Positions 19,358 to 33,539 of a stretch of DNA of 64,000 nt are shown piece after piece; the first letter of the stretch is position 1; each line of letters starts with the position of its first letter. Location of the stretch: positions 7,812,001-7,876,000 of the forward strand of contig NC_135262.1 in NCBI RefSeq assembly GCF_964204865.1, read 5' to 3'. Source of the stretch: Styela clava. Taxonomy: Eukaryota. The notes beneath the pieces were generated by a model. It worked only from the letters and a program-made list of their open reading frames with translations, searched no databases and was not told the origin of the DNA. Position numbers and translations under genes: made by a program.

Positions 19358-22300
19358 ATGGCGGAGAACTCTGGTTACGTGAACGATGAAACACAAGTTA
19401 CGTCTTTCACTAATGAGAAAAACACTAACGGCACGGAAAAGAAAAAAGACAATGCTTACGAAAATGACGAGGTTGGAAGTGGAACTGACGTTCAAGTGGA
19501 CATCTCAGAACAAAACCACACTGGTCCTTATGCTGGTATATATAATATGAGTTCTTAACTTTGCATGTTTTTCTTTCTGCACTATTTGTCTTACTTGTAT
19601 AGCAGTATAGGCATGGTTTCAATCCAATCCTTTCAGATACTGTAATATAACAAACATTGCTAGAATATACGATAGGTGTAATAACAATATATAACACTCA
19701 GTATTATTTTAAAATTTTCATTTGTTGCAAAGTCCACACAATCGAATTGAATTATTCCTAGAAACAGAGAATATGAGAATACAAACTATAACCTTATTAT
19801 ATGATGTATACGCTTTGGCTGCATCTCCGATACACCGATGAAGTTTTTGGTATACCTGCAGAACGGGAATTTACAACCGTCGAATAATTAACTTCCCCGT
19901 CGGCATTAACTTAATATTTCTTTTCCAAACGATATTTTTAACCGACTTCATCTATGTAGAGCTTGCCATGTCATTTTCCACTTACGATTTATCTCCGGGA
20001 AAGTTTCATTTTTCCATCGACCCTTTTGATGTTGTCATGAGCGAACATTTATTATATTTTTTATTTACATAGGAATGCCAAAAGAAGTTCTTTTGAAATA
20101 CTCGCGGCAAAAAAGATTTCTTTGGGCTCGACACATTTTAACAGGAATGGTCATTCTGATTATCTTCATCTTGCTGGCTTTGGTGATCACAATTATCGCC
20201 ATATCGCCCCCGTGTTTACAGTTTTGGCAAACAAGTCCGATTTATCACATCTACCCCAAGTCATTCAGAAGTGCTGATGACAGTAACGGCAATGGAGATT
20301 TTAAAGGTGAGTTAAGTATACTATGTATATAATCTATTAGAGACCATCAATGTAATGTACTCGATTAAGATTGCATGTCTTGTGTGAGATGTTTTTGAAA
20401 TCGAACATGCTTCTCATGTAACAGTCTCATTTGTTATGTACCGAGCGCCCCCTTCTACAAACGGGTATATCTTGCTTTGAGCTTCTTTAATTTGTATTTG
20501 AAATCAATTTGCCAAATATGCTCGCTAATAAATTCAATTTCGTAGTTTACCTAATTTTTTTAAAAATCCTTCTTTATGACGTCAGTGAAAACAATATGGC
20601 CTCACAATGCAATCCCCAATCTTCATTATTACTAGGGATGGCGGAAGCGAGTGTGAATTCGATTACAGAATCGATTCTCCGCGGAATCGACTGGAATTGA
20701 TTCTCCGCTCTTGCATTGGAATCGATTCTTGAGGTTAAAATTTGGATTGGAAACTATGTGTAACGTTTAATGGCAAGTTCTTCACATATATGTATAAACT
20801 GCTTTACTGCTATGCTGAGTTGCTACGACGTCGCAAATTTCACTATTTATGAATATATGTATTTATCACTAGAAGGCTTTTACGTTTATTTCTTTCAAAA
20901 ATCTCTGTGGGTTCCGAGGGATTCGTTTTTTTGTGCGATTTTGTCTACAGTGACAGATTGAATACCCATACTACTTAGTTTTGGCTTTCTTGTTCTTCCA
21001 CATATTTGAACATAGACCTCGTGTTTGATTTCATATAGCATTAAGTGGGTATGCTTTCTCGGGAAGATATGTCGAGGAATCTAGATTCGGAATCGAAAAT
21101 TTAGGAATCGGATAAGAATCGAATACTTGTAAGTAGTCATACTTAGCATCCTTAATTATGACACTACAGTGGATATTCCTGTTAGGTAACGAACAAAATA
21201 GCTATCGTATCGGCAAATAGTTGTGCTGTATATCTACCTATTCCTACGCCTGATTGTATTCATTAATCGTATCGTTTGATGCATTTTTATTCTTGAAAAA
21301 ATATCCAAATTGTCTATAGTGCTGGAAGTCACTAGAATATAATTTAAACCTTCGATTTAACGTTTGTTCATTCAATCTATCCGCAGGTGTCATCGAAAAG
21401 TTGGATTATGTTCAAACTGATCTTGGCATAAATGTTATTGCTGTCAGTTCTGTTTACGAATCTCCCCAATTTGACAACGGATACGACGTTTCTGACTTCA
21501 AAAATGTTGATTCAATTTTTGGAACAATGAAAGATATGGAAAGCTTCATCGTGGAAGTTCATGACAGAGGTAAGGGGGGAAGAAGAATATATTCTTCGAG
21601 TGTGTTAGAATTGCATTTTTTCAAGGCGGTTAGCACACCGGTGATCATAGTTCTGACCGGGCAATCCCTTCGAAGCTAATATTTTTGAAATAAATATTTA
21701 TAATTTTAAAATTATTATTCTGCATATATTAGGCATGAAAATTGTCGTGGATTTTATACCAAATCATTCAAGCGACATGCATGAATGGTTTCTTGCCAGC
21801 TCAAATACGACTCATCCACAACACGAAAAATATAAGGATTATTACGTTTGGGTAAACGGATCCAGTGAGACTGATGTGCCAAATAATTGGGTAATTAGCA
21901 ATTAATAATTTGCAAATTTTGAACTATGAAACTATTATTTGTTTCTGGGACATGAGTTAAACGGCCTACCATCGACAATTAAGTTTCGGTGTTGCAAATA
22001 TTGTTGACAATGCTAACCGCAATCAAAAACATTTGGTCTAATGTCGAATTCCGAATACATTTATAATTGATAAATTGTAATTAATTACTTATCTGACTAT
22101 ATGATGTCGATATCACTTATGCTGATAATTAACGAATTAAAATAACAAAAGTTATTCCCAATATATTCGGAACGTATTCGAATTACATCTTGATCTATAC
22201 TGGAATATATGTCGATAGTATAATAAAAAATTATCATAAAAAATTATCAAGAACTTTATGTAATAAGTTATACAACAAAAATCGATTTTCTTTATCAGAG

Positions 22301-32100: not shown

Positions 32101-33539
32101 TTGTGCCAAATTCTGGGTATATGTCTCTAAAGTCACTTATGTCGTATCCATTGTCAACTTGAGGAGATGCGTATACGGGATTCAACCACAGAACTTTCAC
32201 TCCCAGATCGTCATTGAGATAGTCGAGCTTTTCAATGATGCCTGCGTGTATTATGTTAAAAAAACATGTGAAAAGTATTGTATATGCTGATACACAAATG
32301 TTTTGTATTTTTCAAAGTTCTAAAGATATTACTGTATAACCTAATATCTAGGCGAAACCACTGACGCCCATTTGAATTTGGACATACTCCTCCAACTTCC
32401 CGGATATGTTATATAGTTTTTATCTAGTCTCCAAACAATCTCATCAAAAACTATTATTAGATGCCTACACCACGTTTACCCCATGAATATTAATTGCTAA
32501 TTGTGAACAACAAAATCTGACAGTGATGCTTTACAAGCAAAGCATTAACTTACCTTTTAGGTCGCCATAGCCATCATTACCATCCGCATCTAGATAGGAT
32601 TTCGGATATATTTGGTAAATTGGACTTGTTTGCCAGAATTCAAGACAAGGAGGCGATATAACAACTACTGCTATCACCAATGCTATCAACGTCAAAATTG
32701 TCAAAAGAACGAGGGCGGTCAAGATGTTGCGGGCCCAAACGAACTTCGCTTGACGAGAGTACTGCAACAAAACTTCTTTGGGCATTCCTAAAATGAAAAG
32801 CAATGTTATCATTTATGATATTGTATGATATTGTTTGGCTTTACAAGAGTTAGTAGCATATTGGACTACACGTGTTTTGTGGTTTTCGTGTTTGACTCTA
32901 AAGTTTTGTGTGTTGACGTCATAAAAATTAAAAATTGCGAAACCGTGTGGCGGTTCCGCGATCGCATTTCAGCGATGTCTGAAGGTATTTGGTAAGCAAG
33001 ACTACCGTTACTGGAAATGATTTGATTAATATTTCGTTTTGGCATTCGCGTCAATATATATTTGAGCATTGCTCTGCTGTTTCAGCACATTGTAGAAATA
33101 TCATTTTATTCAAGTCGCTAAGTCGTAACGGTTAGCGTTTTGACTTTTCCAATCCACTCAAACTTTTACCTTAAACAGGATATAAAACACTGGCAAGTTC
33201 ATGCTGAACGTGAAACAAATTTCTCTCATTTGTTTGCAGACAAAAAGTGGCGCAAAGCCCTTAAGTTGTTTTGTGATTTTGGCGTTCTAACAAAATAAAC
33301 TATAATTGAAACAATTCACACTGGTGTGTATTTACACGATACAATGTACCTGCATATGGACCGTCGCTGTCCAGAGTGCTGGCGGACAGACTTGAAGATC
33401 TACTGCTATCAATTTTGACTTTAACATCCTCGAGATCTTCATGAGCTGACGAAGGCGGAACATTTCCACTATGATCATCAGGAGATGGCAACGAAAACGA
33501 AGTAACTCCGGATTCACCTACATAACCACTGTTATCCAT
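26190..33539 (-). CDS. SLC3A1: SLC3A1/rBAT-like, paralogue B (membrane-anchored GH13 alpha-glucosidase/maltase-like, catalytic triad intact); multi-exon, structure parallels paralogue A
   Basis: MDNSGYV...[109 protein letters not shown]. Confidence 0.9.
26687..26915. mobile_element. MITE of the CTCC-AAGTA family with about 65-bp TIRs
   Basis: ctcccaaagtatatgaaccaagttgtcggacaccggaacgtagtatgtgtaccagg pairs with cctggtacacataatacgctccggtgtccgccatcttggttcacatacttccggaa. Confidence 0.8.
26968..27056. mobile_element. 89-bp hAT (Charlie-like) micro-MITE
   Basis: TIR cagggttgtccaacc/ggttggacgaccctg; 8-bp TSD gactagac/gactaggc. Confidence 0.85.

What the first reader, a model, noticed from the sequence alone, without database searches (positions are those of the whole stretch)
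19358..33539. Enzyme/pseudo-enzyme pair: tail-to-tail SLC3A1-like paralogues, one with an intact GH13 triad and one with all three catalytic residues replaced
Seen: paralogue B (minus strand) reads [10 protein letters not shown] (nucleophile Asp, ~29850), FMEIEVY (acid/base Glu, ~28155) and SNHDNSR (His-Asp, ~27870). The aligned positions in paralogue A read GIDGFRCLGV (~23030), FLETQFE (~23687) and SNPESSR (~24350), i.e. D>L, E>Q and HD>PE, while its reading frame and exon structure are intact. Both keep the rBAT hallmarks: PYAGMPKEVL, one TM helix, the juxtamembrane Cys (SPPC) that links to the light chain, and the C-terminal Cys-containing tail. Established: vertebrate rBAT and 4F2hc are GH13-fold heavy chains of SLC7 amino-acid transporters with no demonstrated glucosidase activity, and human rBAT lacks the conserved His. 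Inference: B may be an active membrane alpha-glucosidase that can still bind an SLC7 light chain, coupling digestion to amino-acid transport, while A specialised as a non-catalytic chaperone. That would be a snapshot of the enzyme-to-chaperone transition.
Basis: partly seen in the sequence, partly recalled or inferred. Interest (0 to 1): 0.85.

Follow-up and report, generated by a model that had tools for sequence, protein, structure and literature searches.

The report
Live-site and dead-site rBAT gene pair
The sea squirt Styela clava has two neighbouring copies of the rBAT amino-acid-transporter helper gene: one keeps the full sugar-cutting active site that most non-tetrapod chordates retain, the other has lost it, making a natural test pair rather than a new kind of system.

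Summary
The window is Styela clava (a tunicate). It holds two intact 12-exon SLC3A1/rBAT-like genes, tail to tail and 783 bp apart. Both match RefSeq models exactly: A is XP_039256013.2 and B is XP_039256015.2.

B carries GFRCD, EIEVY and NHD. Its Asp, Glu and Asp align with human rBAT D314, E384 and D449. B also has the Arg and His that human rBAT lacks. A has Leu, Gln and Pro-Glu at the same positions.

Both keep the PYAGMPKEVL motif, the membrane helix, the light-chain Cys, all nine Cys and the Ca2+-site residues. Both fold confidently onto rBAT.

B's complete site is the ancestral chordate state, shared with amphioxus, other ascidians, sharks, coelacanth, lungfish and most teleosts sampled. 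It is not a transitional form. Loss of the site is recurrent (tetrapods, echinoderms, other tunicate lineages), and that the triad is not kept in all rBAT orthologues is already in the literature.

A arose by an old duplication inside tunicates (synonymous sites saturated). A second dead-site orthologue exists elsewhere. A evolves about 1.5 times faster than B but remains constrained.

Whether B hydrolyses sugars is untested. Human rBAT does not.

The parts
19358..25406 (+). Paralogue A: 12-exon SLC3A1/rBAT-like gene, 679 aa, equal to XP_039256013.2 of Styela clava. Exons: 19358-19535, 20073-20306, 21387-21569, 21733-21890, 22299-22427, 22985-23101, 23422-23537, 23673-23871, 24343-24498, 24582-24704, 24878-24999, 25082-25406.
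   Evidence: Gene model built. Identical to P0258. Pfam PF00128 matches exons 3-6, 9 and 10. AlphaFold2 pLDDT 88.1 and Foldseek TM 0.90-0.93 to rBAT structures.
26190..33539 (-). Paralogue B: 12-exon SLC3A1/rBAT-like gene, 675 aa, equal to XP_039256015.2 of Styela clava. Exons (written high to low): 33539-33350, 32787-32554, 32241-32059, 31725-31571, 31075-30947, 29901-29785, 28614-28499, 28173-27972, 27883-27731, 27506-27384, 27239-27118, 26493-26190.
   Evidence: Gene model built. Identical to P0141. E = 9e-162 to human rBAT. pLDDT 89.2. Foldseek best hits are rBAT, then Cqm1.
20075..20305 (+). A exon 2: MPKEVLL motif, membrane helix, SPPC Cys (C107), and the start of GH13 domain A.
   Evidence: Aligns to human rBAT residues 62-140, including C114. 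The model has a helix at 73-103.
32555..32785 (-). B exon 2: MPKEVLL motif, membrane helix, SPPC Cys (C111).
   Evidence: Alignment. The model has a helix at 77-107. This exon was the query.
23027..23035 (+). A, conserved region II: Arg-Cys-Leu. The Arg is kept and the nucleophile Asp is replaced by Leu.
   Evidence: Leu sits opposite human D314.
23686..23688 (+). A, conserved region III: the acid/base Glu is replaced by Gln.
   Evidence: opposite human E384.
24352..24357 (+). A, conserved region IV: His-Asp is replaced by Pro-Glu.
   Evidence: opposite human P448-D449.
29851..29859 (-). B, conserved region II: Arg-Cys-Asp. Both the Arg and the nucleophile Asp314 are present.
28158..28160 (-). 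B, conserved region III: acid/base Glu380 is present.
27869..27874 (-). B, conserved region IV: His446-Asp447 is present.
25407..26189 (.). 783-bp spacer between the two convergent stop codons. Poly(A)-signal hexamers are present on both strands.

Best explanation
These are two rBAT-type (SLC3A1, GH13_35) heavy chains of heteromeric amino-acid transporters in Styela clava. They were produced by an old inverted duplication within the tunicate lineage that leads to Styela.

Both are type II membrane glycoproteins. Both keep what a heavy chain needs:
- the cytoplasmic PYAGMPKEVL helix and one membrane helix;
- the Cys that forms the disulfide with an SLC7 light chain;
- the domain-B Ca2+ ligands;
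- the C-terminal disulfide-looped tail.

B preserves the ancestral chordate condition, a complete exo-alpha-glucosidase active-site set. This set comprises the beta2-alpha2 loop Asp/Tyr, the region I His, Arg312, Asp314, Glu380, His446, Asp447 and the RDxxR motif. A, and its orthologue in at least one other species, has lost the nucleophile, the acid/base residue and the His-Asp pair. A has drifted at further site-associated positions while staying constrained elsewhere.

A is therefore a dead-enzyme heavy chain. It converges on tetrapod rBAT and on 4F2hc. It probably serves as a trafficking and stabilising subunit for one subset of the many b0,+AT-like light chains in this genome.

Shown: the anatomy, the residue states, the phylogeny, the relative rate and the fold. 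Inferred: pairing with light chains and division of labour between A and B. Unknown: whether B's intact site is catalytically used.
For: - Identity with RefSeq proteins named 'SLC3A1-like' of S. clava.
- E about 1e-160 to human rBAT for both proteins, over residues 55-678.
- Foldseek best hits are rBAT for both models.
- Careful ML tree: (B,(A,P0143)) with support 100/99 and 98/98, nested inside a tunicate clade with support 100/99. Holding A and B as exclusive sisters is marginally rejected (AU p = 0.042).
- P0143 is also dead at the site (Ile, His, Gln-Gln).
- Synonymous sites between A and B are saturated; dN = 0.36.
- Of 131 columns that are at least 95% conserved in 42 full-site heavy chains, A changed 20 and B changed 5. 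A's changes overlap those of P0143 (13, expected 4, p = 1e-6) and those of tetrapods (7, expected 2.1, p = 0.001).
- Tajima relative-rate test: A has 1.5-1.9 times more unique changes than B (p = 0.0005-0.017 against tunicate and amphioxus outgroups).
- All nine Cys are conserved between A and B.
- The genome holds at least 10 LAT-family light-chain loci. Several carry the conserved loop Cys, and one cluster best matches b0,+AT.
Against:
- A shows 22 amino-acid differences between the two RefSeq versions, against 6 plus 1 indel for B. Constraint on A is therefore clearly weaker.
- The species of P0143 is unknown. Its grouping with A could be helped by long-branch or convergent effects, and the AU test is only marginal.
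- Pairing with light chains is inferred from conserved residues alone.
Confidence: 0.8

Rival explanations
1. B is a bifunctional protein: a working brush-border alpha-glucosidase that is also an SLC7 heavy chain. A has specialised as a pure chaperone.
For: - B keeps every residue known to be required in GH13 exo-glucosidases, including the Arg and His whose absence could explain the inactivity of human rBAT (PMC8537225).
- The same full set is retained in 43 of 137 heavy chains, spanning amphioxus to teleosts. Counts of the five core residues kept are 22, 15, 25, 27, 5 and 43 heavy chains for 0 to 5 kept. Keeping four of five is rare, so the site tends to decay further once a residue is lost. 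These sequences are related, so this is suggestive only.
- The beta2-alpha2 loop of B is enzyme-like ([13 protein letters not shown]), unlike the displaced loop of human rBAT.
- B scores higher than A against active enzymes (Cqm1 377 against 341 bits; oligo-1,6-glucosidase 295 against 258 bits), although both score the same against human rBAT.
Against: - No rBAT has ever shown activity. Human b0,+AT-rBAT was negative on a pNP-glucoside kit (PMC7159911).
- Conserved residues could serve sugar or ligand binding, or fold stability, rather than turnover.
Confidence: 0.3
2. A is a decaying copy on its way to becoming a pseudogene. Its loss of the catalytic site is part of general relaxation, not specialisation.
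For: - A's branch is faster.
- A shows 3-4 times more amino-acid differences than B between the two S. clava assemblies.
- Expression is unverified.
Against: - All 12 exons are intact with canonical splice sites, despite a duplication old enough to saturate synonymous sites.
- 111 of 131 family-invariant positions, all nine Cys and the Ca2+ ligands are kept.
- The model is confident, pLDDT 88.
- Similarity to human rBAT equals that of B.
- The dead-site orthologue P0143 sits on a 2128-base contig that encodes 663 aa without introns, which implies a spliced transcript.
Confidence: 0.07
3. A has gained a new, non-catalytic ectodomain role, for example binding a glycan or protein in the old cleft, or pairing with a distinct light chain and tissue. 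On this view A is not merely a B that lost activity.
For: - A and P0143 share 13 changes at otherwise invariant columns, which suggests a common remodelled surface.
- The genome has expanded tandem light-chain clusters that could need separate partners.
- 4F2hc shows that a dead GH13 heavy chain can acquire other interactions (PMC8537225).
Against: - The replaced residues differ between A (Leu, Gln, Pro-Glu) and P0143 (Ile, His, Gln-Gln). This looks like release from constraint rather than selection for a new site.
- There are no data on partners.
Confidence: 0.25

Closest known systems
Vertebrate rBAT / SLC3A1 (CAZy GH13_35), e.g. human rBAT in 6LI9 and 6YUP
   Same: - Same architecture from the PYAGMPKEVL helix to the C-terminal Cys loop.
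- About 40% identity over more than 600 residues.
- The light-chain Cys, the domain A/B/C fold and the Ca2+ ligands are all shared.
- B shares the D/E/D triad.
   Different: - Human rBAT lacks the region II Arg (Ser) and the region IV His (Pro), and has an altered beta2-alpha2 loop. B has the enzyme-type residues at all of these positions.
- A lacks the triad that human rBAT still keeps.
- The domain-B disulfide of human rBAT (C242-C273) is absent from both A and B.
4F2hc / SLC3A2 (GH13_34)
   Same: Like A, it is a GH13-fold heavy chain with none of the three catalytic residues.
   Different: - 4F2hc lacks domain B and the rBAT C-terminal tail. A has both and sits inside the rBAT clade.
- S. 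clava has a separate 4F2hc-like locus elsewhere (contig 3).
- A's loss is therefore convergent, not shared ancestry.
Animal GH13 alpha-glucosidases: mosquito Cqm1 (6K5P), Aedes salivary glucosidase (8SLV), Bombyx sucrose hydrolase (6LGA)
   Same: - B shares 34-37% identity with them and all catalytic and -1 subsite motifs (GFRxD, TEAY-type Glu, NHD/SHD, RDPxRTPMQW).
- TM-score 0.88-0.95.
   Different: - These enzymes are soluble or GPI-anchored. They have no N-terminal membrane helix, no light-chain Cys and no rBAT tail.
- Their activity is demonstrated. B's is not.
rBAT-like heavy chains of amphioxus, Ciona, Clavelina, Phallusia, sharks, coelacanth, lungfish and most teleosts sampled
   Same: The active-site signature is identical to B's (H-R-D-E-H-D plus RDxxR), combined with the membrane anchor and Cys.
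   Different: In the data seen here they appear as single copies. Styela adds a dead-site tandem paralogue.

Membership tests
rBAT / SLC3A1 heavy chain (GH13_35) | Type II topology: cytoplasmic N-terminus, one membrane helix, large ectodomain. | tested here: met
   The models have a helix at 73-103 in A and 77-107 in B. These align to the human rBAT membrane segment.
rBAT / SLC3A1 heavy chain (GH13_35) | A Cys just outside the membrane that forms the disulfide with the SLC7 light chain (human C114). | tested here: met
   A C107 and B C111, in the SPPC motif, align with SPKC of human rBAT. This Cys is present in nearly all homologues examined.
rBAT / SLC3A1 heavy chain (GH13_35) | GH13 ectodomain with domains A, B and C, plus the rBAT-specific C-terminal Cys-looped tail. 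| tested here: met
   PF00128 matches the exons. Foldseek TM is 0.89-0.93 to rBAT chains. The C-terminal CFxNxKxCYxxxLxxxxTC motif aligns to human C666/C673/C685.
rBAT / SLC3A1 heavy chain (GH13_35) | Falls inside the rBAT clade in a phylogeny. | tested here: met
   Both sit in a tunicate clade that is sister to vertebrate rBAT, with amphioxus outside it.
rBAT / SLC3A1 heavy chain (GH13_35) | Forms a disulfide-linked heterodimer with a b0,+AT-type light chain and brings it to the membrane. | not testable with these tools
   Candidate partners exist. There are at least 10 LAT-family loci. The loop Cys is seen in L001-L006, and L003 best matches b0,+AT with the Cys aligned.
Catalytically competent GH13 exo-alpha-glucosidase | Catalytic triad: beta4 Asp nucleophile, beta5 Glu acid/base, beta7 Asp. 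| tested here: met
   This row is for B: Asp314, Glu380 and Asp447 align with the triads of rBAT, Cqm1, QsGH13 and alpha-amylase A. For A the feature is NOT met: Leu, Gln and Glu.
Catalytically competent GH13 exo-alpha-glucosidase | Invariant helpers: Arg two residues before the nucleophile, His of region I, His of region IV, Asp/Tyr of the beta2-alpha2 loop, Arg-Asp of RDxxR. | tested here: met
   B has all of them (signature CDYHRDEHDRDR). A keeps the loop Asp/Tyr, the region I His and the Arg. It has Pro for the region IV His and RN for RD.
Catalytically competent GH13 exo-alpha-glucosidase | Measured hydrolysis of an alpha-glucoside. | not testable with these tools
   There are no data for any tunicate or fish rBAT. 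Human rBAT was negative (PMC7159911, PMC8537225).
4F2hc / SLC3A2 (GH13_34) | SLC3A2_N domain above threshold, no domain B, and a position in the 4F2hc clade. | tested here: not met
   PF16028 scores only 15.4 bits on A exon 2, against a cut-off of 27. Domain B is present. The genome's real PF16028 hit is on contig 3.

The most novel reading that the evidence does not exclude
The full-site rBATs (B here, and those of other ascidians, amphioxus, cartilaginous fishes, lobe-finned fishes and most teleosts sampled) are genuine membrane alpha-glucosidases that double as transporter heavy chains. Catalysis was then lost independently in tetrapods and in the Styela A lineage. On this reading the human protein was simply the wrong rBAT to assay. 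The S. clava pair would be a ready-made positive and negative control from one genome.
Probability: 0.3. Interest if true: 0.7.

Novelty: new member of a known kind. Interest (0 to 1): 0.4.

Why it matters
Whether rBAT ectodomains are 'fake or orphan' glucosidases is an open question (PMC8537225). So far it has been tested only on mammalian rBAT, which lacks the Arg and His that GH13 enzymes need.

This locus, and the survey it prompted, point to better test proteins: the full-site rBATs of non-tetrapod chordates. It also offers a natural matched control, a paralogue from the same genome with the same fold and the same heavy-chain features but a dead site.

The result also corrects the 'transition snapshot' idea. 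Heavy-chain function and an intact site have coexisted since before the chordate radiation, and the site has been lost repeatedly.

Tried and rejected
Expression and splicing of A and B in S. clava remain unverified.
Only protein-level rate tests were possible.
- Pairwise dN/dS between A and B: synonymous sites are saturated (NG86 undefined, YN00 failed), so it is uninformative.
- Joined spliced models were never sent to a search tool as letters. Searches were done exon by exon by reference. The joined models existed only in scripts. Once they proved identical to database proteins P0258 and P0141, those ids were used instead.
- An assembly or haplotype artefact as the source of the 'pair' is rejected. 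A and B are only 55% identical, and PF00128 hits in the genome are confined to these two genes.
- A as a 4F2hc-type protein is rejected (membership test).
- My first choice of the 'beta2-alpha2 loop Asp' column was the wrong Asp, lying in the DxNxDGxGD stretch. It was corrected.
- A literature search for tunicate SLC3A1 found nothing. The zebrafish slc3a1 paper does not discuss catalytic residues.
- The earlier-findings search by words gave nothing.
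Full report
**What is there.** I read the stop-free segments of both strands between 19.3 and 33.6 kb and fixed the splice junctions by hand. 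This gave two convergent genes.
- Each has 12 exons, every intron is GT-AG, and the intron phases are identical.
- Exon lengths are almost identical: 234/234, 183/183, 158/155, 129/129, 117/117, 116/116, 199/202, 156/153, 123/123 and 122/122 for exons 2-11.
- A (+ strand, 19358-25406) encodes 679 aa. B (- strand, 33539-26190) encodes 675 aa.
- The stop codons are 783 bp apart. A and B are 55% identical in protein.

**How searches were done.** Exons were searched by reference. The joined models lived only in scripts. They proved identical to two database proteins: P0258 = XP_039256013.2 and P0141 = XP_039256015.2. Both are named 'amino acid transporter heavy chain SLC3A1-like [Styela clava]'. 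From then on I used those ids. The window is therefore from the tunicate Styela clava (contig 17, 7.81-7.88 Mb of a 377-Mb assembly). Both genes are already annotated.

- B has Arg-x-Asp in [10 protein letters not shown], Glu in RFMEIEVY, and His-Asp in MSNHDNSR.
- A has Arg-x-Leu, Gln and Pro-Glu at the same places.

HMMER alignments against solved structures place B's residues opposite human rBAT D314, E384 and D449. They also place them opposite the catalytic motifs of active enzymes: QsGH13 (GVDGFRIDAL), alpha-amylase A (TNHDQNR) and Cqm1 (GFRLDAI, TEAY, SHDHSR, NRDPNRTPMQW). A's Leu, Gln and Glu fall on the same human residues. The flanks are nearly identical, so the register is secure.

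Both proteins align with human rBAT from the PYAGMPKEVL helix to the last Cys, with E about 1e-160. Both share the light-chain Cys (A C107, B C111, human C114), the Cys of RG(W/Y)xC and the three C-terminal Cys. All nine Cys of A and B correspond. The side-chain Ca2+ ligands described for rBAT (the Asn of PNH, the Asp of QPDLN and the Glu of FEAEH; PMC9110406) are present in both.

AlphaFold2 models are confident for both proteins (pLDDT 88.1 and 89.2, pTM 0.83 and 0.84). Their best structural matches are rBAT chains (TM 0.89-0.93), followed by the mosquito glucosidase Cqm1.

**What B's intact site means.** The review by Fort et al. (PMC8537225) states three things.
- Human rBAT keeps the triad but lacks the equivalents of HaG Arg200 and His332, and has a displaced beta2-alpha2 loop.
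- The triad is not conserved in all rBAT orthologues.
- No activity has been found. The assay is in PMC7159911.

I tabulated twelve positions in 143 homologues. The full signature is the loop Asp/Tyr, the region I His, Arg, Asp, Glu, His, Asp and RDxxR, together with the membrane Cys. It occurs in amphioxus, both Ciona species, Clavelina, Phallusia, seven cartilaginous fishes, coelacanth, lungfish, gar and most teleosts sampled. A few teleosts have the nucleophile replaced.

Every tetrapod sampled has Ser, Thr, Asn or Gly for the Arg, Pro (rarely Ser or Leu) for the His, and no RD motif. Birds and reptiles have also lost the nucleophile. So B is not a special intermediate. It carries the ancestral chordate rBAT state, in which the heavy-chain features and a complete site coexist.

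Losses are many and independent: tetrapods, A with P0143, the P0147/P0004 tunicate clade, echinoderms (Holothuria, Antedon) and an annelid (Owenia). Among 137 Cys-bearing heavy chains, 22, 15, 25, 27, 5 and 43 keep 0 to 5 of the five core residues. Keeping four of five is rare, which hints that the residues tend to be lost together. The sequences are related, so this is suggestive only.

**Where A comes from.** A careful ML tree (LG+C20, 25 rows) gives vertebrate rBAT and a tunicate clade (100/99) as sisters, with amphioxus outside. Within tunicates it gives (B,(A,P0143)) with support 100/99 and 98/98.

P0143 is a 663-aa protein from an unnamed sequencing-run assembly. Its contig is 2128 bases, so it must be a spliced transcript. 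It too is dead at the site (Ile, His, Gln-Gln). Forcing A and B to be exclusive sisters costs 11.7 log-likelihood units (AU p = 0.042). That is marginal support for a duplication that predates the split of Styela from that species. Synonymous sites between A and B are saturated.

**Is A decaying?** Branch lengths since the duplication are 0.46 for B, 0.71 for A and 1.33 for P0143. Tajima tests give A 1.5-1.9 times more unique changes than B against six outgroups (p = 0.0005-0.017). The difference is not significant against a shark.

Of 131 columns at least 95% conserved in 42 full-site heavy chains, A has changed 20 and B has changed 5.
- A's changes overlap strongly with P0143's (13, against 4 expected, p = 1e-6).
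- They also overlap with tetrapods' (7, against 2.1 expected, p = 0.001).
- They include the catalytic residues and their neighbours: Ala315, Tyr382, Phe258, Phe406 and Trp160 in B numbering.

A scores as well as B against human rBAT (539 against 543 bits). It scores lower against active enzymes (Cqm1 341 against 377 bits; oligo-1,6-glucosidase 258 against 295 bits). Between the two RefSeq versions of each protein, A differs at 22 positions and B at 6 plus one indel.

Together this describes a protein that has shed a coherent, site-centred module. It is somewhat less constrained overall, but it retains its frame, fold, cysteines and 85% of the family invariants. It is a live pseudo-enzyme rather than a pseudogene.

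**Partners.** The genome contains no other PF00128-detectable gene (a lower bound) and one 4F2hc-like locus on contig 3. It has at least ten LAT-family light-chain loci. These include tandem clusters on contig 18 at 9.31-9.33 Mb and at 8.62-8.68 Mb. Several exons carry the conserved extracellular-loop Cys. One cluster member best matches human b0,+AT, with the Cys aligned. Another matches xCT, b0,+AT and LAT1 about equally. Two rBAT-type heavy chains serving different light chains or tissues is thus plausible but unproven.

**Verdict.** The residue-level observation is fully confirmed. The reading 'enzyme to chaperone snapshot' is replaced by 'ancestral-type rBAT plus a lineage-specific dead-site paralogue'. 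This is one more case of a known, recurrent loss. The kind is known and the genes are annotated.

What is useful is the experimental handle. The locus supplies a full-site rBAT and a matched dead-site control, and the survey shows that non-tetrapod rBATs are the ones worth assaying. I put about 0.3 on B being truly catalytic.

Noticed in passing
window 26684-26924 (intron 11 of B): A unit of about 240 bp matches both strands of itself and of many other loci at 86-90% identity. The first look found 3012 candidates in the genome. It looks like a palindromic, MITE-like, high-copy repeat. It explains why this intron is 624 bp in B against 82 bp in A.
   Followed up: partly
G000 contig 18, 9314483-9333623 and 8624533-8679520; also contigs 5, 10, 4, 13 and contig 17 at 9.71 and 10.22 Mb: The LAT-family (SLC7 light-chain) repertoire is expanded. 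It includes tandem clusters of b0,+AT-like genes that carry the conserved heavy-chain-binding Cys. Some copies show stop codons inside matches and may be broken.
   Followed up: partly
Proteins P0151-P0257: All tetrapod rBATs sampled lack the region II Arg, the region IV His and the RD motif. Lungfish, coelacanth, cartilaginous fishes and most teleosts keep the full set. Birds and reptiles have also lost the nucleophile. This points to a loss on the tetrapod stem.
   Followed up: partly
window 45848-49505 (+), continuing beyond: Alkaline phosphatase exons lie here (for example [26 protein letters not shown]). A trypsin-like serine protease exon lies at about 36424-36663 ([12 protein letters not shown]). 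These digestive or brush-border-type genes sit next to the rBAT pair. Both were identified by reading motifs only.
   Followed up: no
window 13154-15488 (+): Exons of a gene with a fibrinogen C-terminal domain lie upstream of A ([29 protein letters not shown]). They were read by motif only.
   Followed up: no
G000 contig 3, 1156013-1156165 (+): This is the genome's single strong SLC3A2_N (4F2hc-type) match. S. clava therefore has three SLC3 heavy chains in all.
   Followed up: no
Protein P0244 (labelled Lampetra planeri): It groups tightly with cod rBAT (branch lengths about 0.2) rather than at the base of vertebrates. It may be a contaminant or a mislabelled sequence.
   Followed up: no
Proteins P0147 and P0004 (unnamed run assemblies): A second tunicate-clade lineage of rBAT-like heavy chains has partial or complete loss of the site. 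P0147 has Tyr-His for His-Asp. P0004 has lost the region I His, the nucleophile and the His-Asp pair.
   Followed up: partly
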